A DNA stretch of 64,000 nt, taken from the IMG/VR virus record IMGVR_UViG_3300033153_007973, positions 62,001-126,000 of that record; one strand, given 5' to 3'. The notes beneath the pieces were generated by a model, which made no database searches, was not told the origin of the DNA, and saw only the letters and a program-made list of their open reading frames with translations. The position numbers and the translations under genes are program-made. This document shows, piece by piece, positions 35,685 to 64,000 of the stretch (position 1 is its first letter; every line of letters starts with the position of its first letter).

Positions 35685-35700
35685 TATGTAAGGACGAGGA

Positions 35701-35732: not shown

Positions 35733-35749
35733 TTATGATATGAGATGCA

Positions 35750-42383: not shown

Positions 42384-42818
42384 ATGCCAGATGAAAATGC
42401 AATACCAAGCGTAGCTCCAAAACCAGAGGATGATATAATCGGACCAGAAAATGAGGTCCAGAAGGTTGATCAGAGAAAGATCGAGGAATGGAAAGCACAA
42501 TACACCACGATCTTCGCTGCATATCATCTTGGTGAACCATACGTTTACAGACTGTTCAACTATAAAGAATACAAACTCATCAAAGCAAATCTCGCCAAAC
42601 ACTATCAGGAAACACAAACCCCCATTACCGTTGAACAAGAGATGGAAGCGATCTTAAAGCATTGTGTCCTATGTCCAGAAGACTTTGCTGCAAAACTAGA
42701 CGAAGGTGATATCCCGGGTGGACTCCCTTCCGTTATGTACGAAAGTATTATGCAGGCATCTGGATTTAGTGAGCTTTATCCTGATATCATCACAAATAAA
42801 CAACCTTCCACAATATAA
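42384..42818 (+). CDS. putative tail assembly chaperone
   Basis: WKAQY..YVYR..EY..CVLCP..G.PS....IM..SGF; position before tape measure. Confidence 0.65.
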   Translation: MPDENAIPSVAPKPEDDIIGPENEVQKVDQRKIEEWKAQYTTIFAAYHLGEPYVYRLFNYKEYKLIKANLAKHYQETQTPITVEQEMEAILKHCVLCPEDFAAKLDEGDIPGGLPSVMYESIMQASGFSELYPDIITNKQPSTI

Positions 42819-42828
42819 CGGAGGGTAA

Positions 42829-43749
42829 ATGATAGACAAACAGAAACTAGACAAGTGGAGACGCAGATACGGCATAATCTCCGCATTGTCCACTAAGAAC
42901 GGGGATGAATATGTCCTCCGCGGTCTTCAGTTTGAGGAGATGCATAGATGGTCTTCCTTTATTACCGTATCTAAAGGTACTTCAGATACGTATGATATTG
43001 ATGATCAGATTATCGAAGATGTCCTTTCTGCATGTATCCTTCATCCTGAAGAACCAAACATATCTCTAATCATGGAAAAAGCAGGGCTTGTTGTCGAAAT
43101 GTGTAACCGCATTATGAGTGTAACACAATTCGAGAACATGGACTTTCTGATTAATTGTTATATAGATAAACTTAGATCAGCCAATATGGTATATGGAGTC
43201 ATCCGTATGCGATTGGTTGCTCTCTACGGAGTAGCAGTTCTAGAAAAGCTCAGAGATCTAAAGGCAGAAGAAATTATCGAGCTTTTAGTATATGGTGAAT
43301 ACTCCACAGAGAGTATCGGACAGTTCTCTGAGATTATTAACAAGCCAGAGATCCTTCCTAGAGATAGAAAGGGCAAGATCATAGAGAAAGAGATGATGAA
43401 TCTTCTCTTTGGAAAGGACAAACCAAACACTCCTGCACAGAACAAAAGGGAGAAGACACCACATAAACCAAAGACAATCGATGATCTTCAATCGATGATG
43501 GATAAATCACAACAAGCAAATAGAGGACCATCTGAAGAAGAGCTTCAAACAATGGATAGTAAGACACATGCACAGATGAAGAAAGACGGAAAGATACCAG
43601 ATTTCCAACAAGAAGTTAAGGGATCAATGAATGATGCAACATCAGCACTTCAGAAGAAGATTGAAGAAGATAAAGCCAAGTTTGGCACAGGTGCTGCGGA
43701 CAGAACGGGTGGATTTAGAGGAAACATACAGGATCTAATTAATAAATAA
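42829..43749 (+). CDS. putative tail assembly chaperone paralog with C-terminal extension
   Basis: N-terminal ~105 aa resemble the preceding ORF. Confidence 0.6.
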   Translation: MIDKQKLDKWRRRYGIISALSTKNGDEYVLRGLQFEEMHRWSSFITVSKGTSDTYDIDDQIIEDVLSACILHPEEPNISLIMEKAGLVVEMCNRIMSVTQFENMDFLINCYIDKLRSANMVYGVIRMRLVALYGVAVLEKLRDLKAEEIIELLVYGEYSTESIGQFSEIINKPEILPRDRKGKIIEKEMMNLLFGKDKPNTPAQNKREKTPHKPKTIDDLQSMMDKSQQANRGPSEEELQTMDSKTHAQMKKDGKIPDFQQEVKGSMNDATSALQKKIEEDKAKFGTGAADRTGGFRGNIQDLINK

Positions 43750-46700
43750 TGCTTACTCGAACAAGAGACCGAGAAAACCGTGAGCGACTTGGAGAATTTT
43801 CCAAAAAGTCGCGCGGTAGTCCTATTCGCTCTATCCTAAAGATGGGCGCGACCATGCTGGGCTGGGGCATTGGTCTTAAGGTATTCAGAGGAATGTCATT
43901 CAAGGCTAATCTTGGCCTTGGAAAGATATTAGCCAGCACTGTCCGTAAGGGTTCACTGACAAATGCATTCGTCTCTAAAGTTTCTGAGGTAGCAAAAGCT
44001 GGAATAAGAGCTGGTAAGTACACGCCTGGTCAAATATCAACAATGAAGAAAGGCCGCGGCTGGTATAGGAAACTCCAGACAACAGTAAAGACTTCTCTAG
44101 ATACAATGGCTACTCGACATCTCTCTCTGCATGATGCAATAAAGACAGAGGGACTCGCTAAAAGACAGTACTTTGTTAAGAGTAGTCTCGAGAAGACGAC
44201 TAATAGACTTGGAGGAATGCATCAAAGATATGCACAAGCAAAGATCAATGCGAATATTCCAGAACTATTAGATGATCTAAGTCTAAAAGATATTCGCTTT
44301 ACTTCCATTGTTAGAAATACAAAGAAGTTCAGTGGTTCTGGTCTTGGAAGAAAGATAAATGAGATGAGATCCACAAAACTGCTAGAGCCTGGCGGAGATC
44401 TCTATGCTCGAGCAAGGAAGAACAGTGGTGCCACATTGGGAGGACCGAACTTTGGGAAGGCAATGGCGGCACGCATGTATAGATATGGCACAGACTTTAT
44501 GTCATATGCTCCGCTATTCTATGCTTCACATAGATTGACTGCAGTTGATGATAAGAAATGGTACCAGCCTTCTGCAATAGCGGACTGGACTAAATGGGCA
44601 GTCGGTACAGATATTGTATTCCGCGGTGCTATGCCTGCTGCATCAATTGGTCTTCGTAAGCTGGGAAGAGGAGCAGCAAATATTCTTGAGAATACAATCA
44701 GCCCCACAATGGCTCAGAAAGGTGCCAAGTTCCTTGAGTCGATATCAAAGAGCGCACCAATTAGAGCAGCAGATCTTGCTAGAGACTATACTAAAGCAGA
44801 AATTGGCAAGGTAGGCGTTAAAGATGTTCCTAGATATACAAAGACATTCTTCCAACAGTATAGACGATTCCGCGGAATGATTACTAAAGATCCTAACCTT
44901 CATCTGCGGAAGGGCACTGATCATCTAGAGGAAGCAATGTCAATGCTTTCCAAAATAAATACCAGAATCAAAGGATCGATGCCAAAACACGAGGCACTTG
45001 CTCAATTCAAGAAGGAAACTATAGAACCACCAAGCAGGGCAATGTCATTCTTTAATAAGATGATAAGAGGAGGAGGACTGTCAAGTGCATCACGCACAAT
45101 AAAACCAACCGATGTTGGTAATGCATTCAACAAACAAGTTACTGTTAATGCAGGTAGAGGAATGATTTCCTTACAGGGACAAGAGTTTGATGTCTCTAAT
45201 ATACTGCCAAAAAGACTCATGCAAGAAGCAGGGAGGATGCTTGGGAAAGTCAGTATAGCTGGAGTTCGTCCTGGCACATGGTTTGGACTAAAGGGCGCAT
45301 TCAGAAAGAGGCGTCCTTTCGCACAGTTACTGGAAAAGGATCAGCACCTTGGAATTGGGATAGGCGATCATGACGGATTTAGTGGGAGTGCAATTTTACA
45401 GAAGTTTGGTGAACAAGGTGATCGATTAGAACTAGAAAACCAAATAAAATATGCATCCGTGGGAGGAAAGGGGCAAGTCGCAACACTAATTGATAAAGGT
45501 GACAAGACATCAGAAGGATGGGCAAAAACAAATACAAAGAAACTCTATCAGTCCATGATTGCTGCACGAAAGGAAGAATTAACTCCGACCGGTATGGAAA
45601 AGTATAAAGCAGCTCTCGCTAGAGGACATAATATTCAGAGAGAAGGTGAGTCGTTCTTTCTTATGGGAGACAAATCATATTACTCAGTTTCCTCTGGAGT
45701 CGGCACCAAAAAAGCACCGGTAGTATTCCAAACGGGTTATGATGTAAATGCAGGACAATTTCATAGATGGGATCTATATGCTAAAGGACAGGGAGGAACA
45801 TTATCAGATGTCGCAATGGACCATTTTGGTCGAGCTGGTACTGTAGAAGTCGATGGTAAACCCATATATGGATCATCTGGTCCTAGATTACATAGTAGAA
45901 TGCATCCCGACAAGAGTCCAATTGCGAACATGGCAGCTAAGTTCTTGGATAAATTTGAAGTTGGGTCAAAAGAAGAACGAGCAGTATTAGGTAAGATTAC
46001 TGATCTTGGGTTAGGAAGATACATAGACTCAGCCAATACCAAAGTCTTTCTCAGTGATGAATTCCTCTTTCATCCTGAATTCGCAAAGACAACCCTGGCA
46101 CAAGATGATGGTTCAGCTGCAAAACTTATCAGAAGACTAGATGCTCAATCACACCGAATGGAAAAGGTCCAAGCTCAACGTGTTCTCAAGGGTGAACGAT
46201 TAATTACAGCAATTCGTGGAGATATGCAAGGTAATGCAGCCGGTAAGAAAATAGAAAGTACAATAATAAATAGACTAACAGATGATTTCTCTGTTGTAAA
46301 ACAGAAAGCAAAAGCAAGAATGACATTCAATAAAGCAAACAAAATTCAATTAAGACCAGAAATGGAAGAGATCATAGAAGAGATCGCAAGCGGGAATGCT
46401 ACGAGCTTTAGGAAACTACAATCTTCAGTTCATCCTAAATTACGAATGAATAAGCTTGATGCATATAATAACTCTGCATACCGAACATGGTTTAAGTCAG
46501 AAGATTTTGGTGTCCTAGATAGAGAAATGGCAAGTCTCATGGACAGAGGGATTATAACTAGAAACGATAAAGCATTCAGAGCATTAGAGGCAACACGAAT
46601 AATAAGTGAATTCGATAATTTTGATGTACATAATGAACTAATAAATGCAGAATTGGGCAAGTTAGGTGACTATAATCATAACACAATCAATAGAGTCATC

Positions 46701-49700
46701 GGTCGTTTCCAGACTGATAAGGCTTCAGTATTAGATATAGATAGATCAATAGAACCATTATGGTCACCCTGGGGAAGAAATAGCAGAGTAAAAAGCAGTG
46801 GTGGTGATTTCCCGAGATCTGGTCTTCTTATGTCAAAGAATAAAGATGAACATGGTGACATAATGATGTCAATAAAGGAAGAACTATTTCCTAATTCTAA
46901 TGCAATGGAAGGACAGATCCAACCTATTACAATGAAGGGTGCGCAATCTTTGATGATAACCAATGCGATCAACAATGTCGGAAACATTGTTGGTATGGGA
47001 TTTAATAAGAATACAGCATCATCTACTAAATCATTTATGCAAGCAACGCTCTTCAAAAGAATATTGCCAGCTGCTGCAATTGCATCAGCGTGGCAAACTG
47101 CCGATATGGTTGCAGATGAAAGCAATCTCTTTGAGGGTACAAGTCTTGGCGAAGGTCTGAATGTATTTGTAGGAGAACAGATTGCGAAGACGCGACTTAG
47201 TATTGCGAGAATCAATGATATAACTGGAGTAACTGATAGTGCAAAGTATCTAGAAGATTTAATGCCGGGAGCAGTTAATAGCGGATTCAGTGGTGCATTA
47301 AGAGGATTTGGTATTCCAATGCTGGGAAGTGCACTTGGAATGGCTAAAGGTGGTCCCAAAGGTGGGATGATTGGTGGTGCAATTGGTGGCCTAGTCAGTC
47401 TCTTTACTGCAGGTGGACCACTAGCAACGATACAACAATTTGACATTACTAAATCCAGACGAGAATTATTAGAACAATATGCAGGTAGAGCTGAGGTGCC
47501 AATATATAAAGGTCAAGGTTGGTTATTTGGAGGAGGCTCAGTCGGTGGTATAAGACTTGATAGATATCAACCAAACTGGTTTCATAGATTAAGTTCACAG
47601 TATAGACATAGCGATGTTCTTTATGGTGACAAGTTCGAGAGAATGCGAGCATCTCTAGACCCATTTCATTACTACGAGAAACACAAATACTCACGCCCAT
47701 ATCCAGTCAAAGAGATAGCCGGCGTAAATATGCCTCTCGTTGGTAATGTAATTGGACTTGGTGGACAAATGGCTTCTGAAGAGGATCTGAAATATGGAAA
47801 TCTAGCATCATCTGTAGATAGTAATACATCATATCAATCAATTCCATTTGGTGGACAACCAAGTATATATAGTAATGAAAGACCATGGGGTGGATCCATG
47901 ATGAATGGCATAGGACTTCCAGCCGGATCCGCTCAACCAGATGCTCCTCGAGCTATTAAACCAACATCATTCCCTGCTAGAGTAAATGCAGCATTCAGAA
48001 TGTCCACAGAGTTCGCTGGTCTTCGTGGATTTATGACACAGGAAATGATCACCAATGCAAATGGCGGGATGTATCCATACGAACAGAATCCTATTCTAGC
48101 ATCAGCTAGTAGCATGACCTCTCCAAGTCGAATGTTCTGGGAACAGGAATGGGGAGACATGTTAGCTATGTCAGAAATGATCAGACGTTTTGTTCCTAAA
48201 AAGGGACAACACACAAACGAATGGAATCAGATGCCAAACATAATGCCTAAGTGGATGCCTGGTGATGATGGATTTATTAATTTTCAGGCGGGAGATCCCT
48301 ACTGCGTCAGTGCTGACACTCCAATAAATACTTCAACTGGGTATACATTGGCAGCTGATATCTGCGAAGGAGATAAGATCTATACACATAATGGAAGCTG
48401 GTTACCAGTCAAGAAGAAAGTAAGAAGAAAGATCAGGAAAGAAGAGAAGAGTTACAGTTTGAAAGTTTCTGGAGTGTGTGGAGTCGATCTTGAGTTCTCA
48501 GAAGAGCACCCATTGCTGGTAAAGAGAACATCAAAGTGTACGTTCTCGAATTCTTCTATCTGCAGACCGTTGCGAAATCTGATCAAGCCTCTCCCAGATC
48601 TTAAAGGATTCTGTGACAAGGTCAATTCCAAGAAATATAAGAAAGGGTCAGCAGGAACTCCAAAGAGAGGATGTAGTAACTCATGGGAGAATTCAGAAGC
48701 TTCCTTCGTTCCAATTAAAGATTGTAAGCCAGGAGATTATCTTGTCTACAAAATTCCAGCATCTGGCAACGATGAATCAACAATTGTTTCATATAAGCAG
48801 CTCGTTAATAGGTATCGATCACAATATGTAGATGTTGATAGAGTCCTCCACCTAGACGGAGGAATGTGCTGGGTGATCGGGCTGTACCTAGCAGAGGGAT
48901 CCACAGCAAAGGGTAAGAATGTTCCTCATCGGCTCATCTTCTCTATGTCTGATGATGAAGTTGAAGTTCTTAAACATGTCAAGATGCTTCTGTTGCAGGA
49001 ATTCAGTGACGTTCTGAGAGAAGAGTCGTGCCATATCAAGATTCGAGATAAGTCGGCAGAGCTTGTAATCACATCATACATTCTAGCGCAGATATTCAAT
49101 AATTTAGCTCCTGGTAACCTGTATCAGAAACGGATACCTCAAGTATTGTTTGATACAGACAACGATTGTCGCTTAGCATTATTATTTGGAATGATTCTCG
49201 GTGATGGATACATCTCATCCAAAGGCACAAGAATCGGATACTCTACAGCTAATGGTGATCTCGCACATGACTTTAGACGGCTGGCATTCTCACTAGGCAT
49301 CCCTGCATCATATGAGGCTAGGGAGAGAGTTGATGGAAGAACCGGCCGAAGAAACAACGCATATGAATGCAATTTCCATTCGATCAATGTATATGGAATG
49401 AATCTGGCTGACCTACATTACAAATCCGAGTTTGTTAGTTGGGGTTATAGTAGACTTCCCCACGTGGATAACTTCTCAGATGGCGAATACATATATCAAC
49501 GTATAGCACAAATCGATGAGATCGAACTCGAGTATGTGTACGGATTCGAAGTCGACGATGATGATAGTTTCTGTGTCATGGACTTTGCAACTCATAATAC
49601 AAAAATCACAAGAGGAGAGGCTCGTCTACCAGGAGCAGGTTATACATCTATGAAAGATGTTGCATTTAATTTCCCATTTGAAGCTGAATATCTTGGATTC

Positions 49701-54400: not shown

Positions 54401-57400
54401 AGATCGTACAAGGTCTTTTGAAGATAATTGACAATCAAGGAGAACTTGGGCGAAATGTCAAATTTTCAGTTGATGATCTTCTTGGTGGAGCAACACTATT
54501 AACACACATGGGTAATAAAAGCACTAGTGATACAGCAACTCTTATAGGTAGGACTCTCAATATTAATACTATCAAAGATCCTGACACTTATAAAAAGATG
54601 ACTAAAGGTCTGGCAAAAGTGATCGAACAATTTGGACATGAGAATAAGTCGAAGAGTGCAAACACAGCAAGTGAGATTATGGATTCTATTGTAAAATTTA
54701 GAGATGGAGAGATCAGAATATTTGGTCTCTCACAGATGTATCATACTGCACCAGACATTGATGAAACTTTCAAGATGAGCTCTGGAAAGTTTGGGCCCGC
54801 GGGAGTTGGTGGTGATCCAGCTGGGACAATAACATCAATGACAGAAGTAATAGCAGCAAAATTGAGCGGGTTCAATTCACTTGCAGACAAAGCACAATTA
54901 CAAATGGCAATGGGAATGGAATACACAAAAGATTACTTTGCCATATATGCAGGTCTTCTTGAGCCTTCATTAATGGAAGAACGTCTGGCTCAGTTTGGAA
55001 CTGATAGATTCAAAAGTAAGAATCCTGGAAAACAAGAAGTACTAACTATAGATAAGCTCATGAGTATGGCAAAGAGAGATAAAGATGGAAAGAAGAACAG
55101 ATTCTTCGATCTGTTCAAAACCAGATACGGAGTCAATACAGAAGCATTTCAGGAAGCAGTTGGTGAAGGTGGTATTCTATTCGGGAAACAGAAGATTGAG
55201 ATGGCAGAAGCCATGAGTAATATACAAAGACTCGTAAATGAAAACATGAAGGAAGTGGATCTCGAAAAGTTCTCTGGTAATGTAAAGAAACAAATACAAG
55301 AGATCATGTCACTGTCTCCGCTTATTTCGTCAAAACAAGCACAATTATATCACGAAATAACTCGAGATTATAAGTTCCTTGAACTAAGTAAGAAACACCC
55401 ACTGAAAATACTGGGAGTTAATAGATCAATGTCAAGAGTTCCTATGGTTGGATTCTTTGATATTCCTACACGTGATATTCCAGATAACCTTATGGATGTC
55501 TTTGCAAATAGAGATCTATATGCTATAAACCAAAAGATTATAGAAGGTACAAATGTAGATATTGGAAAACAAGTCATAGGGAAAACAGGCGCAAAGATAG
55601 GAAAGGATATTTCAAAGAGTTCAAAGGTGCTTGTTCAAAATGCTCCACATCGCGCATTGTTAAATCTTATGACTGCGGTATCTGTGGGTGCAGATGAAGA
55701 AGTCATCGGAACATTCGCAGATAGATACACAACAGCCATACAACAATACTCACAGGCAGTAGGAAGAACTACAATTAGTCCTAGAGTTGGTGGGTCTTTA
55801 CAGACACGGCCATTACAATCTGAGGGAAAATTTAACCTCGCTATTATGAATACCAAAGCAGCAAAATATAGTCTTATGAATGCTGAGAAAGTAAAGAATA
55901 TGCCTGGTGCACTTTCTGGTACTCGGATATGGCAACCAGATCTAGGTGAGATTTGGATGGATAAGAGCACTTTTATTAATGTAATGAAGAGTGAGATGAG
56001 CGGTGATCATAGATCAATGAACAAGGCAACACAGATGGCTGATGAAATCATGGCCGAATCTAGAATATTTACGAGATTCTATAATAGAAAACCAACACTA
56101 GGACAAGACATAAGAGCACTCCGTGTCAGACTTTTTGATGCTGAGATGCTTACAGATCAAAGATTTGCTGGAAAGGTTGCATCAGGTGAGATAGCAAGAT
56201 TAAAGAAATCAATGATCCTTTCCGTGATTGATCAAAATCTTGCATCAGGTGACTTTGATGGTGATACTGGTGCAATGGTCATGGCTATGTTCAAAGGTAA
56301 GATGTCTGATAATGCAGATGTACTAGCGGATTGGGTAGTTGGTAATAGTTTCAGATATCAGACAAGCGATGGAAATATCAAAGTATTCGAGAATAGTGGC
56401 AGAACTGGTAGAGCATATATGGAGACATTCCAAGAAGTAATAGAAACATCTGCTCATAAATCAGACAATAAAAGATTATCTAATCAATTATCAAAGACAA
56501 CAGTAACAATTGAACAACAGATAGAACACGTTGCAGGAATGGTTCCAGATTCTGCAGAACGCGGACAGTTCTATACAAAAGTAAGAGATCTAGCAAAAAA
56601 GCAATATGGAGATGATCTATCACAGGCTGTAACATTTCGCACTGGAATAGGAGATATCAGATTTTGGAATAACTCAACAAGCATTCCTAGAAATCTTATA
56701 CGCGCTAAAAGAGCAGCAGAAGCAAAGATGACAGAACGAGCAACGGGCATCAATACTGCAGATATTATCGAAGAAGGAATTGAAGCAACTGAACAATTCC
56801 TTGGTGATCACGGTATGGTCTATGACCATAAAGGCATAGCACAAGAACTAAAAGCTACACATGCTGGGACAGGTGGAGGGAAAATAGCACATGCAGCATT
56901 AGCAAACATGAAAGATCAAATAGATTATTATGGTCCTTCACGGCTCATGTTAAAAGCCGGAACAGGACCCGTATATAACTTTATGCACAACCATTTATGG
57001 AACGCAGCAATTAATACCTTTGGTATTACTTCTCAACAATCAAAGGATCTTGTTAAGTGGGGAAGAGTTCCACAGCAAGCAAATATCTCTATGAAACATA
57101 TGCTTCCTGGAATTGCCGGCGATGCTGTTAATAATCTAAAGACATTCTGGACTGCTATACCAGGAAGTTCAGCACACAGAAACTCTGGATTGAAACTAAA
57201 GACAGGCAACTATGATTTTACACTTACAAAGTTTTGGGGAAATCAAGTAAAGAGAACACAACAGATAGCTAAGAAGCTTGGTGATGATAGTCTTGATGAT
57301 ATGCTAGAGAAGGTCACATCATTTGGTACAAATCCCATCGTCAAAGATGATGGAGTAATCAATCTAGGTGACTTTATACGACTTCAGGATCGAAGACTTA

Positions 57401-58272
57401 AATATATGGAACGAGGTCTTCTCGCTAAAGTATCAGATGAAGGAATAGCTGCAACACAAAAGAGTAAGTCTGTATCTGAAAAGCTCATGAACGAGTTAGC
57501 TACAGAAGATCGAGTATATAATGAGATAGAGGAATCTGGAGCTTTCTTCAGAAGTGTTGCTGGTAGTGAATCCGCAACATCTCATATCATGAATAAGAAG
57601 ATCTTTGAAGGTGGTAATCAGAGAATACATAGATCTTTTCGTGCATTATTTAGTGGAGAAAACATTGGAAAACATGTCGATGATGATATATTAAGAGGAA
57701 CACTGGGGCAAGTAGCACAGAAAATAGCACCAGCAAAGATAAAGCCGCTATTCACTCGTCCTAATGTTGCTAAATATGCAGCAGATTCAATCTCTCGAAA
57801 AGCAGCTAGACTGATTGAAGGTACTTCTCTACGGAAACATATAGATACTAAAGGAATGAAAGCCGCGGGAATGGGAATGACTTTGCTCGGCACTGCTGCA
57901 GTTGGTTTCTTGGCATTTGCTGCTGCATCCCCTGGCGGACAACCTTGGCTAGGACCAAAACCTGGATATGGTGGAGAATACAACGAACGCAGACGTCGCA
58001 AAGATGAAGAGCACATGGAGAATATCACCACCACTGGAAGATCCAAGCTCAAATTTCTAGATGGGAACTCATATCCAGATTACACACCATCCAAAACTGC
58101 TAGAATCTATATAGATCCACAGAAGAAGAGATATGCAACTGTATCACAAACCTTACGTTCTGTCCAAAATCTTGGTAATGCAGGAATCATGGACTTTAAT
58201 AAGCGACAGATGGTATCTGGTGGAACAACAATCAATAATATGTCAAGGCCGAATGGATATGGAGGATTCTAA
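51448..58272 (+). CDS. putative single-chain two-barrel (virion) RNA polymerase
   Basis: PRVGGS, NRKPTL (aa 1546), GDFDGD (DFDGD aa 1602-1606) in beta-prime order; beta-like GQVNVLF..DAGELRITDE upstream. Confidence 0.75.
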   Translation: MRYPNRIHAGDHDNDSIFSPIAPLLAIGAVSAIGMSVAMINRNSMLRSKYSRIAAGMDRYPTQALPRVDNSSAFSVLRSEAAMNELKAMKKQRLIDVARMAIQKEEEVIANEVSDALGDLMNIRYNLSNIELRRAWGSGHPFELAGTIADTLDEAILGISTGKPDSIRDAITRLKTDIATIQTRPNTSVEIRAGDLQQVLERLQGAEKLYTEDLPKLVNAVQPFAPGAVTAETAATILGGSPATLAKRLNEEQIPGGKKGRVNRERMEQIKILTGFKTEKINNRLVTTHGRVNWVRKLRGISPTTGAIMPAGSTIKVIYPQIGVTGNIEDLDRVVQAAGKEFRTHPLLKEAHKTHLRMAKNAKGNVKLLLSSPDMKTSLKRFTDGVVEHLGVNPRDITFTQEGANVVSLVKFTDAPPMRFVFPYEEAGLSASYGHNVISASKKSFTHMGKGEKKILSSSITNGFIDRMVGKGTGSNGVFQKMATAGDIKNGAFKDATSRVLFQRKVKGIFSGGGKMMTDVTNASPEAISNAVTTFEELPGTDKISVLQIMKHEEETKLSTIISNPTGNRFVGQKTAVLDKINSLQRQINKLQKGYSADKALTDLERTHTGKLKVAEVINYNNNNIIISELSKDGFIPTTSVVTPERALKNKAWGLEDIRERYSDPGLQWIKGSKSINNMYVSSDVSIFSPSSSDWGRRISNLKKRSKHRLKLTIGKKEVNFSGVRMISRAEQVKRAALAGDYSTARGSYGQVNVLFVDSIGGDAGELRITDEVGDMLAGSRDRKVSLNSADIRRPFSGIDQQMTKALKKVSKENGLIDLTAPENWHVRKKLNVFLPKIKDQIKTPYEDIKLTAITHKATGSYEFHYTANMTAATKSKILLGANNERLQVHSTLSKDRMFEMLAAEMDWDLSDANSSKTQFLRDIGATVGAKAPLSLFKKGIATPGAAAGLGMSITNALVFRTLYRVQKILADRGLRTMDDKQATKIVQGLLKIIDNQGELGRNVKFSVDDLLGGATLLTHMGNKSTSDTATLIGRTLNINTIKDPDTYKKMTKGLAKVIEQFGHENKSKSANTASEIMDSIVKFRDGEIRIFGLSQMYHTAPDIDETFKMSSGKFGPAGVGGDPAGTITSMTEVIAAKLSGFNSLADKAQLQMAMGMEYTKDYFAIYAGLLEPSLMEERLAQFGTDRFKSKNPGKQEVLTIDKLMSMAKRDKDGKKNRFFDLFKTRYGVNTEAFQEAVGEGGILFGKQKIEMAEAMSNIQRLVNENMKEVDLEKFSGNVKKQIQEIMSLSPLISSKQAQLYHEITRDYKFLELSKKHPLKILGVNRSMSRVPMVGFFDIPTRDIPDNLMDVFANRDLYAINQKIIEGTNVDIGKQVIGKTGAKIGKDISKSSKVLVQNAPHRALLNLMTAVSVGADEEVIGTFADRYTTAIQQYSQAVGRTTISPRVGGSLQTRPLQSEGKFNLAIMNTKAAKYSLMNAEKVKNMPGALSGTRIWQPDLGEIWMDKSTFINVMKSEMSGDHRSMNKATQMADEIMAESRIFTRFYNRKPTLGQDIRALRVRLFDAEMLTDQRFAGKVASGEIARLKKSMILSVIDQNLASGDFDGDTGAMVMAMFKGKMSDNADVLADWVVGNSFRYQTSDGNIKVFENSGRTGRAYMETFQEVIETSAHKSDNKRLSNQLSKTTVTIEQQIEHVAGMVPDSAERGQFYTKVRDLAKKQYGDDLSQAVTFRTGIGDIRFWNNSTSIPRNLIRAKRAAEAKMTERATGINTADIIEEGIEATEQFLGDHGMVYDHKGIAQELKATHAGTGGGKIAHAALANMKDQIDYYGPSRLMLKAGTGPVYNFMHNHLWNAAINTFGITSQQSKDLVKWGRVPQQANISMKHMLPGIAGDAVNNLKTFWTAIPGSSAHRNSGLKLKTGNYDFTLTKFWGNQVKRTQQIAKKLGDDSLDDMLEKVTSFGTNPIVKDDGVINLGDFIRLQDRRLKYMERGLLAKVSDEGIAATQKSKSVSEKLMNELATEDRVYNEIEESGAFFRSVAGSESATSHIMNKKIFEGGNQRIHRSFRALFSGENIGKHVDDDILRGTLGQVAQKIAPAKIKPLFTRPNVAKYAADSISRKAARLIEGTSLRKHIDTKGMKAAGMGMTLLGTAAVGFLAFAAASPGGQPWLGPKPGYGGEYNERRRRKDEEHMENITTTGRSKLKFLDGNSYPDYTPSKTARIYIDPQKKRYATVSQTLRSVQNLGNAGIMDFNKRQMVSGGTTINNMSRPNGYGGF

Positions 58273-58469
58273 TGGGTGCTACAATCACAGTGAATGTCAC
58301 GATAAAGAACCAGGATCCAAACGAGATCGCAGCCAGGATCAGAAGTGCCCTTGAAAGCGTAACTTCAGAGCCAGTAACGATTAACATAACAGCGAGTGAA
58401 CAACAGGTTGACAATAATGCTATCTCAGTGTACAATAGAGAAAAACAGGAGAGAGGGCAACCACGCTAG
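58272..58469 (+). CDS. 65-aa beta-alpha-beta protein
   Basis: GGAGG SD; TAATG coupling. Confidence 0.7.
   Translation: MGATITVNVTIKNQDPNEIAARIRSALESVTSEPVTINITASEQQVDNNAISVYNREKQERGQPR
58408..58436 (+). promoter_or_regulatory. intragenic sigma70-type promoter
   Basis: TTGACA-17-TACAAT upstream of ATG 58484. Confidence 0.7.
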
Positions 58470-58483
58470 CCCGCAGCTAATCT

Positions 58484-61400
58484 ATGGCTATATCTGCTAT
58501 ATCCTATTCTTCATTTTCTGTCCACGAGCTGTGTAAATACCAGTTCTGGTATCAGTATTATGCACAGCTTGCTGGTGATACTGGATCCAAGGCAACTGCC
58601 ATTGGTAACGTTACTCACACAGAAGCTGAAGACATGCTTCAGGAGCTGACGAATGTCCTTCCAGACAACACAGAGATAGGCTTCACAGAGATACAGAGAC
58701 AAGAAGTCGTACAAAGATATCAGGCTATTGTGTCATCCGGTCTAAAATCACTCCAGAGCCGATACGATATAACTCCAGCAGATATACAGAGAGCACTGGA
58801 TGGACTGGATAGACTTTCAAAGAGAACATATCTAGTTGGTGTACCAAATGACCAAGGTGTATATGATAAAATCAGATGGCAAGTAATAGACAAGGAAAAG
58901 CGATTTGATAAGACAATCAGTTCTCCAGATGGCGAATATAAACTGACTGGATCTATTGACTTAATCTTGAAGCGTCTCTTGGATGCCGGTGGTAATCCTA
59001 TTGCATCACATGTCCACCAGTTTATGGATCTTAAGTCTGGAAAGAAACAGTTTGGCCCAATCAGCTGGAAATCAGAACAGGTTATGGTTTATGATATCGC
59101 ACTTGGTGACCTATATAAGGTAGACGGCATAGCACCAACTCTCCGATATGACTTCTTCCTCTTACCAGATGATCCGAATCCCCACTATACCACTGTTGTT
59201 CCAGTTGGAAACGAAGTAAGACCAGCAGATTATCTTGCTAGAAGAGACAAGGTAAATAGCAGACTTTCTGCAGCATATAAATTCTTAACAGATGGAATTC
59301 CGAACGATTCAAATGATCCAACTGTTATCATAACTGAACCCAATGATTGGTGTACCAGATGTCCGGCATATCAACATTGTCCTAATAAAGAAAATGCAAA
59401 TCTCAGAAAAGCCCCAGCTGGCGGCCTCCGCGGAGGACCATATCCTGAACTCAGAACGCTCACAGAAAAGACAGGAGCATTTGCGAAGTCTGAACTAAGC
59501 GACGAAACACTCACTGAAATAATTGAACAGATTATAAATCATGGTGGTACAGTACGTGAAGCAATCGGCCACATGAAATCAGATGAAAGAGAATTATGGA
59601 CAACAAAATATACTAAATTCATGCAGGATCATTTATCTAACAAGACAAACGATATTATTGCTGATAATAAAAGGATCAAAGAAACAATACTTCAAATTGG
59701 TGCAGTTCACATAACCGCACCAATTACTAACATCAGTCTAACAGATAGAAAAGAAGTCGTTACCGCAGACACACTACGAACAAAAGAATCATTGACGCTA
59801 AGGAAACAGACATCAAATAGAGAAGCAAATCTCACTATTATCTTTTCTGGTAAAGACCAGATCAACTATGAACTACGTCATATCTTAGCACAGTACCAGG
59901 CTTTTCCATTTACTCAGATCAGGAACAAAGAAATCACAAGGATGCTAATCCCGCTCCAGTCACATCTACCAACATACTTTGCAGTCGATCAGACTCTTCT
60001 CAGAAAGGTACTCACAGACAACAACATAAAAGACTTCTCCACACAAAAAGGAGAAGCACACAGAAAAGACCTTAAAGCAGCTAGAGATGAAGTCTATTCT
60101 AAAGTTAAATTCATGTATGCAATCCGATCAATATCAATCGCACCAGTGCCATCTCTGGTTGATACTATTGAACTCAACTTAAGGATCCAGGTCATGGACT
60201 TGGATCCTGTAAGCGAAACTGGCAGAATCAGATTTCTATATGACACACAATCCGCACTGGAACAGCTTGGTTGGTTCACGCATTTCTGCCGACTAAATGA
60301 ATATCGTAAGAATGATACAAATGGATCTAAAACCATTGTTGATACAATTATACCAAAAGAAAAAGCAATAACGATATCATTCAAGAATGCAACAAACCAT
60401 AGAAAAATTGATCTAGGTAAATATTCAGTATTAGCTATGCCTTTATATATTGGAAGAGAAGATAATACATATTTCGTAAATCCAGGAGACGATGAGTTTA
60501 TTGATAAAGATGCGTACATCTTATTGGTTAGAACTCCTAATCGAGACACAACAACAACAACGTATACTTATCTAGCATTCTTGTATACCAGAGGATTATT
60601 ACTACCGATACGAGAATCAGATACATATCTTGATAAAGGGAAGATCAAGTTACCAGATGAACGATTAGTGGGACCTATAGATTCTCTAAAAACTGCTGAT
60701 CTTTCATATGTGTTCTGTACGGATCTATCAGTATATACTGAATCTGCATATAGCAGACGCGAATTAACAGAAGCATTTAAACTGTCGTGGAATAAACTTA
60801 CAGCGGCAAATTTTAATATAGCGCAAATAAATGCACGTAATGGAGTCCTTTCTCCTAGCACATCTGATCCACGACGTGCACCCGCATGGTTGAATGCATC
60901 AAAGAGATGGAAGAATTTCAATACTAACGGTGATATCTGGCCAATCATTAACCCTACTAATGTTATTGACCCATTCCTGACAATGATTGAAATCAGAAAC
61001 CAATCAAGTAACATAGTATCAGGCATCAGTGCAGAGATAAATGATTTGCCATGGGTAAGCGAACACAGAAACATGCAAAGCAGAGGTGTCTTTGGTGAAT
61101 GGATGTATACTTCACCTGTGATGCCAGCGCGTGTATCATCTGAAAACAGCACAGGAACAAAAGATGCAACAGTAACTATTACAGGGGTGGATAAATCAAC
61201 AATACCATTATTAGTAATCCAAAGGATATTCAGAAAACTATTCCTTAATTCTGAAGTATTGTTTACAACAAATCTTGGTGCTCTTATTAAGAGAAACTTA
61301 CCAAAGACATCTGCAGACCCAAAGCCATTTATTAAAGATCTTCAGAAATCATTTGAGGCTCGGTTCCAAAATGCATACGATAATGGATTTTATGCATCAG

Positions 61401-64000
61401 GACAGACCGAAGCTTATATCAGATTCTTAACTATTGATGCAATAGATAGAAGTAATATGCATCCGATCAACAAGACACAGGAAATTACTGTTAGTGACAG
61501 AAAGGGAACAATATTAACTAAACATAATATAGCATTTACTTCTGATAATCCTAATACAATGGATATAAAGTCTGGGAAACCAAAGGCTGAAATTGATACT
61601 AATACATTTATAGTAATGCCGCCAATCATTAATAAGAAGTACGCACAAATACTTATTAGCGAATATCATCGATATTCTGCAACTACTGAAGTTGCATATA
61701 GATTAGCATACAAAAGATTAGGTTCGGATGCTGATGCAACCAAAATTATATCAGAAGTGCAGAAGATTAAAAGTGCGCTATTACCATCGAATACACTATA
61801 TAGAGTACACAATACATTCTGTAAAAGAATGTCAGAGAAAGGTATTGGTTTTATTAATTATAGGAATGCTGTAGAAGAAATGCTATATGACAGTAGCATA
61901 ATAACCCCCAGTGCTGTTACATATACACCAAATCCTAATTCCACAAATGGAATGCTTGTTAGACTTGACCATGCAGCAGCAAACAATCTTCTAGATAAAA
62001 TAGTAGGATACGAAGGTCAAGATATCACATATTATGAGAAGATACTAAATGGCGGTACTCCGATTTTACGAGATGATATAGAATCATCCGAGGTCACTAG
62101 AGATATAAAAGTTATGTCAGGTGGTGGTTCCAATCCTGCACAAAGAGGATTGACAGTTGATAGTCTATCGCTCTCCAGACCATTCATTAAATATTATACT
62201 TCTCTTCTCGCAGAGTATGTCGATCCAGATAAGTATCTTGATATACTCGAGAGAGTTCCAAGTTACTTATATCACAAACCATATGAACAACACGTAGAAT
62301 TCCCATTACTACAGCCATATATCAAATCAGGCGAAGAAGGAAGAAGGAACAACATCAAAATCTTCTTCCGTAGTCTCAGATCGAGCACATTTGCAGCAAC
62401 TCAAGAAGATAAACTTAGCCGTGCTGCTTTTAGAACTATTAATGATATCGTCTTAAATGGAATACGAGAGATAATCTCAGGTTTCATGCCAGGAACCAGT
62501 GCAGAATATAGGCAATTTATTAATAGCGTTGCAAATGATCCAGAGACATCCAAATTATATAATCCAACAAATTGTGCAGACTGTTACTGTCCACACAATG
62601 CGGATATCAAAGCATACATAGATAGGCAATTAAGTGCTAAAATCAATAAGATGGCGGAAGATCTTGGAAATACTATTCCAACAGATAGTTCGATAACAGC
62701 ATCATCAACTGGCGCAGCCGATGGAATAGCAGCAAAAGAACTAATAATAAGTATAGTAAAGCAACTGAAGAAATATCCTGAACTCGTGACTGTGCATCAA
62801 CCACCAACAGAAGCTTCATATAATAGAATCGTTCGTGCTGTGCATAAACAAGGAACGATTAATCCAAATGACGGAGCAGTTGACCAAAGAAATCCAAGCC
62901 GCAGCCCTAGATTTCAGAGCTATTTGTACATAGGTACATATATAGCTGGTCTTCTTTACCTTCTCATGTGGAGAATGAAAAGATTTGCAGAACAGGATAG
63001 AGATAAGAATATAGTAAATGATGATGTTAGACGAAAAATAAGCATCACAATGAAATTAATAGATACTATTTTGAACAATTCAAGTTCAACTCAAGATAGG
63101 TTGACGCAGGAAATTCGTGGGATATTCAGTGGTATTGTAACAGATTATAAGAAAGATCAGAGTGCAAAAGAGAAGAGCAAATTCCAAAACTTAAATGTTG
63201 ATATAGAAACAACACAAGCAGAAAACAGTGTGTTAGAACTATCAAATCTATTTAATCATTATGGAAGAGCAATTGTAAAGTTAAAGACCATGCCAACATT
63301 CATAATTAAACGCAATGTTGATGGTAATATTATAAATCAAAGACAAGTACTAACTGATAGAGCAATATTAGATAGTGTACCAGAAGGCGATGTCTATCAC
63401 ACTATTATTACAAGTGATATTTTTGAAACACCAAATTTCAGGATATCAAGTGAAGTATCTATTTTGAAGGATGCACTGCTAAGTAGTGTTCTCACCTTAT
63501 TTGATAGTTTCATACCGGATCTCTTCTTTTGGAAAGAAATTAATATCGAGAATTCCAAAGACAGAGAGACTAATGTGACTACGATTACGAACTTCAAAAT
63601 AGCACAAGAGAATAATATTGTACCAGTATATATGGAGGGACATGAATATCCATTCCCACAGTGTCTTGGAGGAAGTTCGACCCAACTAACTATTGACTTC
63701 ATCACAGATGATATGTTCTTGGTAGAAAACATTGCAGAAGCAGCAACTGAACTCAATATCATGATGAAGAAATATAACCTGATCAAGAATGTCAATCCAC
63801 TTCGAAGACCAGCTGGTACTGAAGAATCCAGTTCCAGACATAAACAACTTAATAATCTACTTACTAGAGATCGACACAGAAGACACCTCGTAAATAAGCT
63901 CAATACTGCTATCAATGGTAAAGAACCTCAAATTAGCAAGAGCGGTCTTGATACTCCAATGCTTATCCAGAACAATATCGCAAATATGGTAGGTCTATAT
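58484..64000 (+). CDS. Cas4/AddB-like Fe-S PD-(D/E)xK nuclease fused to giant baseplate-like protein (partial, at least 1839 aa)
   Basis: manual translation: SYSS....LCKYQF, IGNVTH, EKRF, GSIDL, DLKSG, QVMVY, WCTRCPAYQHC; frame spot-checked as open to window end, which explains its absence from the ORF track. Confidence 0.8.
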   Translation, partial: MAISAISYSSFSVHELCKYQFWYQYYAQLAGDTGSKATAIGNVTHTEAEDMLQELTNVLPDNTEIGFTEIQRQEVVQRYQAIVSSGLKSLQSRYDITPADIQRALDGLDRLSKRTYLVGVPNDQGVYDKIRWQVIDKEKRFDKTISSPDGEYKLTGSIDLILKRLLDAGGNPIASHVHQFMDLKSGKKQFGPISWKSEQVMVYDIALGDLYKVDGIAPTLRYDFFLLPDDPNPHYTTVVPVGNEVRPADYLARRDKVNSRLSAAYKFLTDGIPNDSNDPTVIITEPNDWCTRCPAYQHCPNKENANLRKAPAGGLRGGPYPELRTLTEKTGAFAKSELSDETLTEIIEQIINHGGTVREAIGHMKSDERELWTTKYTKFMQDHLSNKTNDIIADNKRIKETILQIGAVHITAPITNISLTDRKEVVTADTLRTKESLTLRKQTSNREANLTIIFSGKDQINYELRHILAQYQAFPFTQIRNKEITRMLIPLQSHLPTYFAVDQTLLRKVLTDNNIKDFSTQKGEAHRKDLKAARDEVYSKVKFMYAIRSISIAPVPSLVDTIELNLRIQVMDLDPVSETGRIRFLYDTQSALEQLGWFTHFCRLNEYRKNDTNGSKTIVDTIIPKEKAITISFKNATNHRKIDLGKYSVLAMPLYIGREDNTYFVNPGDDEFIDKDAYILLVRTPNRDTTTTTYTYLAFLYTRGLLLPIRESDTYLDKGKIKLPDERLVGPIDSLKTADLSYVFCTDLSVYTESAYSRRELTEAFKLSWNKLTAANFNIAQINARNGVLSPSTSDPRRAPAWLNASKRWKNFNTNGDIWPIINPTNVIDPFLTMIEIRNQSSNIVSGISAEINDLPWVSEHRNMQSRGVFGEWMYTSPVMPARVSSENSTGTKDATVTITGVDKSTIPLLVIQRIFRKLFLNSEVLFTTNLGALIKRNLPKTSADPKPFIKDLQKSFEARFQNAYDNGFYASGQTEAYIRFLTIDAIDRSNMHPINKTQEITVSDRKGTILTKHNIAFTSDNPNTMDIKSGKPKAEIDTNTFIVMPPIINKKYAQILISEYHRYSATTEVAYRLAYKRLGSDADATKIISEVQKIKSALLPSNTLYRVHNTFCKRMSEKGIGFINYRNAVEEMLYDSSIITPSAVTYTPNPNSTNGMLVRLDHAAANNLLDKIVGYEGQDITYYEKILNGGTPILRDDIESSEVTRDIKVMSGGGSNPAQRGLTVDSLSLSRPFIKYYTSLLAEYVDPDKYLDILERVPSYLYHKPYEQHVEFPLLQPYIKSGEEGRRNNIKIFFRSLRSSTFAATQEDKLSRAAFRTINDIVLNGIREIISGFMPGTSAEYRQFINSVANDPETSKLYNPTNCADCYCPHNADIKAYIDRQLSAKINKMAEDLGNTIPTDSSITASSTGAADGIAAKELIISIVKQLKKYPELVTVHQPPTEASYNRIVRAVHKQGTINPNDGAVDQRNPSRSPRFQSYLYIGTYIAGLLYLLMWRMKRFAEQDRDKNIVNDDVRRKISITMKLIDTILNNSSSTQDRLTQEIRGIFSGIVTDYKKDQSAKEKSKFQNLNVDIETTQAENSVLELSNLFNHYGRAIVKLKTMPTFIIKRNVDGNIINQRQVLTDRAILDSVPEGDVYHTIITSDIFETPNFRISSEVSILKDALLSSVLTLFDSFIPDLFFWKEINIENSKDRETNVTTITNFKIAQENNIVPVYMEGHEYPFPQCLGGSSTQLTIDFITDDMFLVENIAEAATELNIMMKKYNLIKNVNPLRRPAGTEESSSRHKQLNNLLTRDRHRRHLVNKLNTAINGKEPQISKSGLDTPMLIQNNIANMVGLY

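What the first reader, a model, noticed from the sequence alone, without database searches (positions are those of the whole stretch)
43749..64000. Candidate system: tail-module giant proteins carrying a transcription and nuclease toolkit
Seen: three giant ORFs after the tail chaperones, separated only by a 65-aa ORF, carry in order an intein plus dead PD-(D/E)xK domain, RNAP catalytic motifs, and an intact Fe-S nuclease; a DEDDh exonuclease fusion lies in the head module. The first two giants have hydrophobic or glycine-zipper segments. Inference: an injected, membrane-associated complex that couples genome entry to first transcription and DNA-end processing or protection in a contractile-tailed jumbo phage. 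I cannot confirm novelty without searches.
Basis: inference. Interest (0 to 1): 0.85.

Follow-up and report, generated by a model that had tools for sequence, protein, structure and literature searches.

The report
Tail-borne RNA polymerase in jumbo phage
Three giant tail genes of an uncultured 234-kb contractile-tailed phage match the internal tail and baseplate-hub module of Bacillus phage 0305phi8-36. Here the middle protein probably carries an RNA polymerase active site and the hub carries an intact iron-sulfur nuclease, so the phage may deliver its first transcription enzyme through its tail.

Summary
Three co-directional giant ORFs follow the tail chaperonins:
- G1: 2570 aa, window 43749-51461.
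- G2: 2274 aa, window 51448-58272.
- G3: starts at 58484 and runs off the window; the full protein is 3795 aa.

A conserved 65-aa gene lies between G2 and G3.

G1 is a homologue of virion protein gp145 of Bacillus phage 0305phi8-36. It carries a complete intein (residues 1519-1950) and a degenerate PD-(D/E)XK-like domain.

G3 is a homologue of gp147, the enlarged gp27-like baseplate hub. It has an N-terminal Cas4-type four-cysteine nuclease that three orthologues also carry.

G2 sits where that lineage has its presumed tape measure. It has N- and C-terminal membrane segments and an RxPTL...GDFDGD block. That block is invariant in five orthologues that are only 17-21% identical, and it aligns collinearly with the catalytic barrel of crAss-like virion RNA polymerases (hhalign E = 0.002).

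The polymerase fold itself was not confirmed: both structure models were of low confidence.

The best reading is a tail-delivered virion RNA polymerase. This resembles the tape-measure-fused polymerase of Thermus phage P23-45, but in a contractile-tailed jumbo phage and with a nuclease-bearing hub. I file it as a new variant of a known kind.

The parts
32452..34893 (+). Tail sheath (context)
   Evidence: phrog_16991 tail sheath, 3.5e-25. BLASTP to 0305phi8-36 gp139 sheath, 5e-20.
34953..37890 (+). Tail tube, tube paralogue and gp142-like protein (context)
   Evidence: BLASTP: the 243-aa ORF matches gp140 tube at 5.6e-31, the 408-aa ORF matches gp141 at 2e-17, and the 304-aa ORF matches gp142 at 1.3e-07.
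42384..43749 (+). Two tail-chaperonin-like genes (144 aa and 306 aa)
   Evidence: The 144-aa ORF matches gp143 ('hypothetical tail chaperonin') at 4.7e-07 and the L006 176-aa gene at 2.4e-18. The 306-aa ORF matches the L006 348-aa gene at 7e-32. Gene order is as in 0305phi8-36.
43749..51461 (+). G1, 2570 aa: gp145-family internal virion protein
   Evidence: phmmer to 0305phi8-36 gp145 at 1.2e-58, to Edson at 1.5e-43 and to Moorella phage at 6.1e-38. Full-length BLASTP to the L006 homologue.
48303..49598 (+). Intein with LAGLIDADG homing endonuclease (G1 residues 1519-1950)
   Evidence: Pfam LAGLIDADG_3 4.7e-10, Hint_2 and Hom_end. gp145, Edson and L006 read GDP[YF]-x-K...GE-x-RLPG without interruption. 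C1 and the terminal HN|T are present.
49599..50250 (+). Degenerate PD-(D/E)XK-like domain of G1 (D2047; KIK at 2056-2058 in place of ExK). The 3' boundary is approximate.
   Evidence: ESM features are nearest to PDDEXK_1, Cas4 and YqaJ clusters, scores 0.93-0.95. The alignment shows gp145 D...EFK, G1 D...KIK and L006 D...DIH. No HMM hit.
51448..58272 (+). G2, 2274 aa: giant protein in the tape-measure position, with a two-barrel RNA-polymerase-like catalytic block
   Evidence: Orthologues P0004, P0005, P0006 and P0007. The synteny G1-G2-small ORF-G3 is seen in four other contigs.
51493..51573 (+). G2 N-terminal hydrophobic segment (residues 16-42)
   Evidence: Kyte-Doolittle mean 2.0 over 19 residues. 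The full-length alignment of the orthologues has an invariant residue within it (A26); their N-termini look similarly hydrophobic by eye, not measured.
55933..56292 (+). DPBB-A-like catalytic block (residues 1496-1615): P-x-x-GE, NRKPTL, GDFDGD
   Evidence: Invariant P1497, G1500, R1547, P1549, G1601, D1602, D1604 and D1606. hhalign against the crAss-like vRNAP profile gives 97 collinear columns, E = 0.0022. 84 of the 100 nearest named ESM clusters carry PF05183 RdRP.
57862..57981 (+). G2 C-terminal hydrophobic segment and the WLGP-x-PG-x-GGEY motif
   Evidence: Hydropathy. Invariant W2167, L2168, G2169, G2173, G2175 and G2176. Shared by the C-terminal fragments P0002, P0003 and P0008-P0010.
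58272..58469 (+). Conserved 65-aa gene between G2 and G3
   Evidence: Homologous small ORFs of 51-68 aa lie in the same position in L005, L011, L012 and L006 (uncalled there), all starting MG-x-x-h-x-V.
58484..64000 (+). G3, first 1838 of 3795 aa: enlarged gp27-like baseplate hub protein, continuing beyond the window
   Evidence: Full ORF is L003:2201-13588. phrog_20474 7.9e-38. phmmer to gp147 at 9.6e-17, Edson at 1.9e-26 and Moorella phage at 3.1e-20. A Baseplate_J gene lies downstream.
58484..59383 (+). Cas4/RecB-type PD-(D/E)XK nuclease domain with four cysteines (G3 residues 1-300)
   Evidence: Pfam PDDEXK_1 7.6e-10, above the cut-off. phrog_69 exonuclease 1.5e-14. Motif positions. The same domain is found in orthologues at 2.9e-32, 8e-20 and 4.2e-07.

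Best explanation
The three giants are the internal tail and hub module of a distant, uncultured relative of Bacillus phage 0305phi8-36.

- G1 is the gp145-type virion protein. It has glycine-zipper segments and a PD-(D/E)XK-like domain that is no longer catalytic. An intein sits in its most conserved motif.
- G2 occupies the slot that this lineage assigns to the tape measure. It has a membrane segment at each end and an embedded catalytic barrel of a single-chain two-barrel RNA polymerase, closest to the crAss-like gp66 / QDE-1 clade.
- G3 is the enlarged gp27-like baseplate hub, with a Cas4-type Fe-S nuclease at its N-terminus.

Inferred mechanism:
1. G1 and G2 are stored in or at the tail tube, and G3 closes the tube at the baseplate.
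2. After sheath contraction G1 and G2 leave through the tube and insert into the cytoplasmic membrane through their hydrophobic segments.
3. The G2 polymerase transcribes the first-entering genes without host polymerase, as shown for P23-45 gp96.
4. The hub nuclease enters, or is exposed, at the same moment and acts on DNA at the entry site. Its target is unknown.

Shown: the homologies, the synteny and the motif conservation. Inferred: virion location of G2, ejection, catalytic activity, and any coupling between the three proteins.
For: Lineage and position:
- The gene order sheath, tube, tube paralogue, gp142-like, two chaperonins, three giants, gpJ-like baseplate matches 0305phi8-36.
- G1 matches gp145 at 1.2e-58 and G3 matches gp147 at 9.6e-17.
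- gp145 and gp146 are virion proteins by mass spectrometry. gp147 was assigned as a gp27 hub homologue with exchangeable enzymatic N- and C-terminal domains, including a nuclease domain in the BtI1 homologue (PMC2147016).

Polymerase:
- RxP[ST][LI], then about 50 residues, then GD[FL]DxD, is invariant in five orthologues at 17-21% identity.
- Chance expectation is 1.4e-5.
- Profile-profile alignment to eight crAss-like vRNAP segments covers the whole barrel collinearly, E = 0.0022.
- ESM features are nearest to RdRP PF05183 clusters.

Nuclease: PDDEXK_1 in G3 and in three orthologues.

Conserved gene order G1-G2-small ORF-G3 in four further contigs.

Precedent: the P23-45 tape-measure-fused vRNAP carries DFDGD and transcribes the pre-early genes (PMC10770324).
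Against: - No library HMM recognises G2: Pfam, PHROGs and NCBIfam are all negative, even at E up to 10 for Pfam and PHROGs.
- No PDB sequence hit.
- hhalign to P23-45 gp96 aligns only 21 columns around the motif, E = 0.2-0.3.
- The extended hhalign to crAss vRNAP drops to E = 0.1.
- Both AlphaFold models are of low confidence (pLDDT 37.7 and 47.8) and the fold search returned nothing meaningful.
- A second barrel (DPBB-B), a bridge helix and a trigger loop were not identified.
- G2 shows no detectable similarity to gp146, so its tape-measure role rests on position alone.
- No virion proteomics exists for this phage.
- Cultured relatives lack both enzymatic features, so nothing can be transferred from them.
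Confidence: 0.6

Rival explanations
1. G2 is only a tape-measure or ejection protein. The conserved Asp-rich block is a structural metal site, or another non-polymerase function, that resembles the polymerase motif by convergence.
For: No HMM or structural confirmation. The positional counterparts in 0305phi8-36, Edson and Moorella phage have no such motif. hhalign significance is borderline.
Against: Three collinear blocks (PxxGE, RxPTL, GDFDxD) match the polymerase barrel rather than one motif. Invariance at 17-21% overall identity. Chance expectation is 1.4e-5. ESM features independently point to RdRP-type clusters.
Confidence: 0.15
2. The hub nuclease, and the enzymatic decorations in general, act outside the cytoplasm. 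On this reading they are exchangeable 'attack' domains at the tail tip, analogous to the tail lysozyme, for example clearing extracellular or periplasmic DNA. There would then be no link to genome entry or transcription.
For: In this lineage the hub N- and C-termini carry interchangeable lytic domains, and the BtI1 homologue carries a staphylococcal-type nuclease (PMC2147016). gp147, Edson and Moorella hubs have other domains at these ends.
Against: A Cas4-type domain with an oxygen-sensitive four-cysteine cluster is typical of cytoplasmic enzymes (established knowledge of Cas4/AddB, not tested here). It co-occurs with the G2 polymerase motif in all four contigs in which the hub N-terminus can be read.
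Confidence: 0.2
3. G2 is a two-barrel enzyme but not a DNA-dependent RNA polymerase. It could be a primase-like or RNA-dependent polymerase, or a PolD-like DNA polymerase.
For: The nearest ESM clusters are annotated RdRP (PF05183). QDE-1 has both activities (PMC9508822, abstract).
Against: Characterised phage members of this clade (phi14:2 gp66, P23-45 gp96 and gp64) are DNA-dependent RNA polymerases (abstracts). A dsDNA phage needs early transcription.
Confidence: 0.05

Closest known systems
Thermus phage P23-45 gp96, tape-measure-fused virion RNA polymerase (PMC10770324)
   Same: A giant protein of the tail module carries a DFDGD two-barrel polymerase motif and membrane segments. It is thought to leave through the tail and to transcribe pre-early genes at the entry pore.
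   Different: P23-45 has a non-contractile tail. Its polymerase is N-terminal (DFDGD at residue 779 of 5002) in a protein with a metallopeptidase. G2 has the motif at 1602 of 2274 and no peptidase. Sequence similarity is limited to 21 columns, and the barrel resembles crAss-like enzymes more. In the window a separate giant (G1) lies between the chaperonins and G2.
crAss-like phage virion RNA polymerase (phi14:2 gp66, PDB 6VR4; crAss001 gp50)
   Same: A single-chain giant virion protein with DFDxD. It gives the best profile match to the G2 barrel: PxxGE, YRIPT versus NRKPTL, and GSDFDID versus SGDFDGD, all collinear. It is encoded among other giant structural genes.
   Different: crAss-like phages are classified in a different order (Crassvirales) and are podovirus-like (my own knowledge). 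The match is borderline (E = 0.002) and limited to one barrel. No similarity was found outside it.
Bacillus phage 0305phi8-36 gp145-gp146-gp147 module (PMC2147016)
   Same: Same gene order. G1 is homologous to gp145 and G3 to gp147. The two-gene chaperonin, the tube paralogue and gp142 are shared. The hub has exchangeable enzymatic ends.
   Different: gp146 has no DxDxD motif and no similarity to G2. gp147 carries peptidoglycan hydrolases rather than a Cas4-type nuclease. gp145 has no intein and keeps a canonical D...ExK.
Cas4 / AddB / RecB-type PD-(D/E)XK nucleases with a 4Fe-4S cluster
   Same: Pfam PDDEXK_1 above threshold. One N-terminal cysteine and three C-terminal cysteines (CxxCx5C), plus the D, DxK and QxxxY motifs.
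   Different: Here the domain is fused to the N-terminus of a 3795-aa baseplate hub protein. Cluster binding and activity were not tested.
N4-like (Schitoviridae) gp50 and phiKZ-like virion RNA polymerases
   Same: Virion-carried polymerases that start transcription without the host enzyme. N4 gp50 is ejected together with other ejection proteins (PMC13434306, abstract).
   Different: N4 gp50 is a T7-like single-subunit enzyme packaged in the head (my own knowledge). phiKZ-like enzymes are split multisubunit polymerases. Neither is encoded in the tail module.

Membership tests
Two-barrel (DPBB) RNA polymerase superfamily | Metal-binding DxDxD motif in the DPBB-A barrel | tested here: met
   GDFDGD at G2 1601-1606. 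D1602, D1604 and D1606 are invariant in five orthologues.
Two-barrel (DPBB) RNA polymerase superfamily | Conserved barrel strands upstream of the motif (RxP[ST]L-type strand, as in beta-prime NRAPTLH and crAss YRIPT) | tested here: met
   NRKPTL at 1546-1551, with R and P invariant. Aligned to the crAss consensus YRIPT by hhalign. The comparison with beta-prime is from memory.
Two-barrel (DPBB) RNA polymerase superfamily | Statistically significant profile similarity to a known member | tested here: inconclusive
   E = 0.0022, probability 13%, against the crAss profile. E = 0.2-0.3 against gp96. E = 0.1 for the extended region. No Pfam, PHROG or PDB hit.
Two-barrel (DPBB) RNA polymerase superfamily | Second barrel (DPBB-B) with basic residues, bridge helix and trigger loop | tested here: inconclusive
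   Conserved blocks KxGTGxVYN (1836-1844) and QQxNISxKH (1876-1884) lie downstream, but hhalign to gp66 and gp96 did not align them. No upstream block could be assigned to DPBB-B.
Two-barrel (DPBB) RNA polymerase superfamily | Double-psi beta-barrel fold | tested here: inconclusive
   AF2 mean pLDDT was 37.7 for the 836-aa segment and 47.8 for the 261-aa segment. Foldseek found no match at E <= 0.001.
Two-barrel (DPBB) RNA polymerase superfamily | Template-dependent RNA synthesis | not testable with these tools
   Needs biochemistry.
Tail tape measure protein | Encoded after the tail chaperone genes and before the hub | tested here: met
   Both G1 and G2 lie between the chaperonin-like genes and the hub. 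In 0305phi8-36 the second giant (gp146) was assigned as tape measure.
Tail tape measure protein | Homology to a known tape measure, or a length that scales with tail length | tested here: not met
   No similarity of G2 to gp146 and no TMP family hit. Tail length is unknown. G2 is therefore not filed as a tape measure, only as occupying its position.
gp27 / gpD-type baseplate hub | Homology to hub proteins and a position just upstream of the baseplate wedge genes | tested here: met
   G3 matches gp147 at 9.6e-17, Edson at 1.9e-26 and Moorella phage at 3.1e-20, in collinear blocks around residues 2812-2965 and 3401-3556. Baseplate_J lies three genes downstream. The gp27 assignment of gp147 comes from PMC2147016. 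Pfam itself reports no hub domain in G3.
Cas4/RecB-type PD-(D/E)XK Fe-S nuclease | PD-(D/E)XK core motifs (D, D/ExK, QxxxY) and a family HMM match | tested here: met
   PDDEXK_1 at 39.6 bits, cut-off 22. D159, D182-L-K184 and Q199...Y203. Orthologues match at 2.9e-32, 8e-20 and 4.2e-07.
Cas4/RecB-type PD-(D/E)XK Fe-S nuclease | Four cysteines: one N-terminal and CxxCx5C C-terminal | tested here: met
   C17, C290, C293 and C299 in G3. The same pattern is present in the L005, L006 and L011 orthologues. Cluster binding was not tested.
Intein (Hint + LAGLIDADG) | N-terminal Cys, terminal His-Asn followed by a +1 nucleophile, two LAGLIDADG motifs, and a host protein that is contiguous in intein-free homologues | tested here: met
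   C1519, H1949-N1950, T1951; LYLAEGS at 1712 and GMILGDGY at 1814. Pfam hits. gp145, Edson and L006 are contiguous at this site.

The most novel reading that the evidence does not exclude
A rare clade of 0305phi8-36-like jumbo myophages has turned its tail lumen and hub into an enzyme-delivery device. On this reading a crAss/QDE-1-type RNA polymerase built into the tape-measure-position protein, and a Cas4-type nuclease built into the hub, are injected together. Both would act on DNA at the entry pore: the polymerase would pull in and transcribe the leading genome end, and the nuclease would attack host DNA or process the incoming end. This would be the first tail-delivered polymerase in a contractile-tailed phage. 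It would also be evidence that the crAss-type virion polymerase moved between unrelated virion architectures.
Probability: 0.3. Interest if true: 0.8.

Novelty: new variant of a known kind. Interest (0 to 1): 0.6.

Why it matters
In the paper library searched here, tail-delivered transcription has one characterised example, the siphovirus P23-45.

A second, independent case in a contractile-tailed jumbo phage, with a barrel closer to crAss-like enzymes, would suggest two things. First, fusing a two-barrel polymerase to tail-internal proteins may be a recurrent solution for host-independent early transcription. Second, it would give a new, very divergent branch for tracing the history of two-barrel polymerases.

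The hub-fused Fe-S nuclease and the paired intein insertions in G1 mark out conserved, probably essential sites in proteins whose functions have been unknown since 0305phi8-36 was sequenced.

The practical limit is that every member found is metagenomic. The cultured relatives lack the enzymatic domains.

Tried and rejected
**Searches that found nothing**
- Megablast of the region and tblastn of G2 against 50,697 phage records: no match.
- Word-indexed protein searches with G2, with the G2 alignment and with the G3 N-terminus: only the query itself.
- IMG/VR scans with G2 and with its alignment: only the source contig.
- The JGI metagenome scan added one known locus and two short fragments.
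- The exhaustive HMMER search of G2 residues 1080-2274 found only ten representatives, so no deep alignment could be built.

**Structure**
- AF2 on 836 aa and on 261 aa, each with five sequences, gave low confidence.
- The Foldseek result on the second model is noise and is not used.

**Family and profile comparisons**
- Relaxed Pfam and PHROG scans of all five G2 orthologues found no polymerase family. NCBIfam found only intein models.
- PDB sequence searches of G2, G3, the G2 profile and the G3 C-terminus found nothing relevant.
- hhalign of the G2 C-terminus against gp146 found no relation.
- hhalign of the downstream conserved blocks against gp66 and gp96 found none.

**Readings I dropped**
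- I considered that this was a crAss-like podovirus. The sheath, tube and 0305phi8-36 synteny reject that.
- I read a staphylococcal-nuclease-like segment by eye in some G3 orthologues. Pfam does not support it, so I dropped it.
- The resemblance of QQxNISxKH to the trigger-loop motif of cellular polymerases is from memory only and is not used as evidence.

Full report
**What is there**

The window comes from a 234,008-bp viral contig, IMGVR_UViG_3300033153_007973. A second contig from another sample carries an identical copy of the region that was compared.

All large genes are on the + strand. In order they are: terminase, portal, major capsid, sheath, tube, tube paralogue, a gp142-like gene, a 1491-aa ORF, two chaperonin-like genes, and then the three giants.
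- G1: 43749-51461, 2570 aa.
- G2: 51448-58272, 2274 aa.
- G3: starts at 58484 and has no stop before the window ends. On the contig it is 3795 aa (L003:2201-13588).

A 65-aa gene lies at 58272-58469, between G2 and G3. Downstream of G3 come two small genes and a Baseplate_J gene. The genes overlap or abut, so they form one operon-like block.

**Which phage lineage**

Nothing in 50,697 GenBank phage records matches at the DNA level.

G1 gives tblastn hits to Bacillus phage 0305phi8-36 ORF145, Moorella phage MTATph1 and Bacillus phage Edson. The annotated 0305phi8-36 region shows the same order: sheath gp139, tube gp140, tube paralogue gp141, gp142, two chaperonins gp143 and gp144, then gp145, gp146 and gp147, followed by gpV-like and gpJ-like baseplate genes.
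- gp145: 1930 aa, a virion protein by mass spectrometry.
- gp146: 2537 aa, "hypothetical tape measure", also found in virions.
- gp147: 1903 aa, annotated "endolysin".

Pairwise tests confirm homology for the sheath, tube, paralogue, gp142 and gp143. G1 matches gp145 at phmmer 1.2e-58 and G3 matches gp147 at 9.6e-17. Edson and the Moorella phage give similar values.

Hardies et al. (PMC2147016) made three relevant assignments:
- gp146 is the tape measure, from its length only.
- gp147 is an enlarged homologue of the T4 gp27 hub whose N- and C-terminal enzymatic domains are exchangeable. The homologue in the Bacillus thuringiensis prophage-like element BtI1 carries a nuclease domain.

The three giants are therefore the conserved internal tail and hub module of this old myovirus lineage.

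**G1**

The intein is real.
- Pfam finds LAGLIDADG_3 (4.7e-10), Hint_2 and Hom_end.
- The residues expected at both splice junctions and both LAGLIDADG motifs are present.
- gp145, Edson and the L006 homologue read GDP[YF]-x-K-x-x-x-GE-x-RLPG without interruption exactly where G1 has C1519...N1950.

The L006 homologue has its own intein about 45 residues upstream, in front of the conserved NEI-x-RRF motif. Two independent inteins in one short segment mark it as the most constrained part of the family.

The segment after the intein looks like a PD-(D/E)XK domain to the protein language model: named neighbours are PDDEXK_1, Cas4 and YqaJ at 0.93-0.95, and the top hit scores 0.96. In the alignment gp145 has a canonical D...EFK, G1 has D...KIK and L006 has D...DIH.

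The second glycine zipper (about 2306-2335) is conserved in L006.

**G2**

No library recognises it.

An exhaustive HMMER search of residues 1080-2274 found ten representatives: three other giants (2605, 2700 and 2925 aa), a 1314-aa fragment and several C-terminal fragments. They are 17-21% identical to G2. The invariant positions cluster in a few blocks:
- P1497-x-x-G1500
- R1547-x-P1549
- G1601-D-x-D-x-D1606
- K-x-x-T-G-x-x-x-N near 1836
- Q-x-x-I-S-x-K-H-x-x-P near 1877
- the C-terminal membrane segment with WLG-x-x-x-G-x-GG

The ordered pair RxP[ST][LIM] followed by GD[FLY]DxD is expected 1.4e-5 times in a protein of this size and composition.

The same three blocks appear in the same order in phi14:2 gp66: RPGQIFM, YRIPNQ and GSDFDID. 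A profile of eight crAss-like polymerase segments aligns to the G2 family over 97 collinear columns that span the whole barrel, E = 0.0022 for this single comparison.

The language-model search placed G2 residues 1459-1779 next to RdRP (PF05183) clusters in 84 of the 100 nearest named clusters, score 0.85.

Evidence on the other side:
- The match to P23-45 gp96 covers only 21 columns.
- Extending the region weakens the crAss match.
- The downstream blocks do not align to gp66 or gp96.
- Both AlphaFold models are of low confidence, and the fold search is uninformative.

I put the probability that G2 contains a two-barrel polymerase active site at about 0.8.

G2 has no detectable similarity to gp146. 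gp146, the Edson protein and the Moorella protein in that slot lack the motif pair.

**G3**

The N-terminal 300 residues match PDDEXK_1 above Pfam's cut-off, and PHROG 69 exonuclease. The domain has C17 and C290-x-x-C293-x5-C299, D159, D182-x-K184 and Q199...Y203.

The same domain is found in the G3 orthologues next to the G2 orthologues: 2.9e-32, 8e-20 and 4.2e-07. The fourth orthologue is cut off by the end of its contig.

The rest of G3 shares collinear blocks with gp147 and with the Edson and Moorella hubs, and with the 1954-position PHROG 20474. The cultured relatives have no cysteine cluster.

**Synteny**

G1 homologue, G2 homologue, a 51-68-aa gene and a G3 homologue occur in that order wherever the contig is long enough: L005, L006/L009, L011 and L012. 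The small proteins are alignable by eye.

The polymerase motif and the hub nuclease thus travel together in a small metagenomic clade. The clade is rare: ten representatives among 1.8 billion, and only the query's own phage in IMG/VR.

**How it most likely works**

[quoted passage not shown] It is present in virions and transcribes the pre-early genes. The authors propose that it works at the pore formed by the tape measure while DNA enters (PMC10770324).

G2 fits that model in position, in its membrane segments and in its motif. G1 and the hub are its physical neighbours in the tail by homology. I therefore propose tail delivery of G2, membrane insertion, and host-independent first transcription.

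The role of the hub nuclease is open. It could act in the cytoplasm on host or incoming DNA, or outside the cytoplasm as one of the exchangeable attack domains typical of this hub family.

Nothing here shows that the three proteins form one functional complex.

**Comparison and novelty**

The kind of system, a tail-associated virion polymerase, is known from one siphovirus.

What is new here:
- a contractile-tailed jumbo host lineage;
- a barrel closer to the crAss/QDE-1 clade;
- a separate gp145-type giant ahead of the polymerase protein;
- a Cas4-type nuclease on the hub.

Full-text searches found no report of this arrangement. I rate it a new variant of a known kind, of moderate to high interest. 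The rating is held down by the unconfirmed fold and by the absence of a cultured member.

Noticed in passing
window 13002-16304 (+): A 1100-aa ORF upstream of the terminase. Read by eye, its N-terminus has DEDDh-like motifs (FIDTET, NSSFDEA, HEGVGD). It also has two glycine-rich hydrophobic segments like those of the tail giants. No Pfam or PHROG hit. It could be another ejected protein.
   Followed up: partly
window 37890-42365 (+): A 1491-aa ORF inserted between the gp142-like gene and the chaperonin-like genes. It has no family hit and no counterpart in 0305phi8-36. L006 has a 2318-aa gene in the same position, with no detectable similarity.
   Followed up: partly
window 58272-58469 (+); L005:10659-10814; L011:9591-9791; L012:3992-4198: A small gene (51-68 aa, starting MG-x-x-h-x-V) is conserved between the polymerase-motif giant and the hub in every contig of the clade. 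Function unknown.
   Followed up: partly
L006:3020-9994: The G1 homologue of another clade member carries an intein at a different site (...VHN|TNEILRRF), about 45 residues upstream of the G1 insertion point. These are two independent intein invasions of one conserved segment.
   Followed up: partly
L010:18435-24227 (0305phi8-36 gp145): The cultured phage's gp145, of unknown function, keeps a canonical D...EFK where G1 is degenerate. The gp145 family may therefore include active PD-(D/E)XK nucleases inside virions.
   Followed up: no
L002 (IMGVR_UViG_3300033143_005075): A second IMG/VR contig from a different sample (120,098 bp) matches the compared 662-residue stretch of the hub gene at 100% identity, so the phage was assembled independently twice.
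   Followed up: no
L009:11534-17527: In the phage that encodes P0007 the G3 counterpart ends after 1522 aa and another long ORF follows in a different frame. Either the hub gene is split there or the assembly has a frameshift.
   Followed up: no
L017, L022 (crAss-like cr4_1 and cr52_1 polymerase segments): These segments have 3 and 2 in-frame stops when translated with table 11. This would fit the stop-codon reassignment reported for some crAss-like phages (my own knowledge).
   Followed up: no
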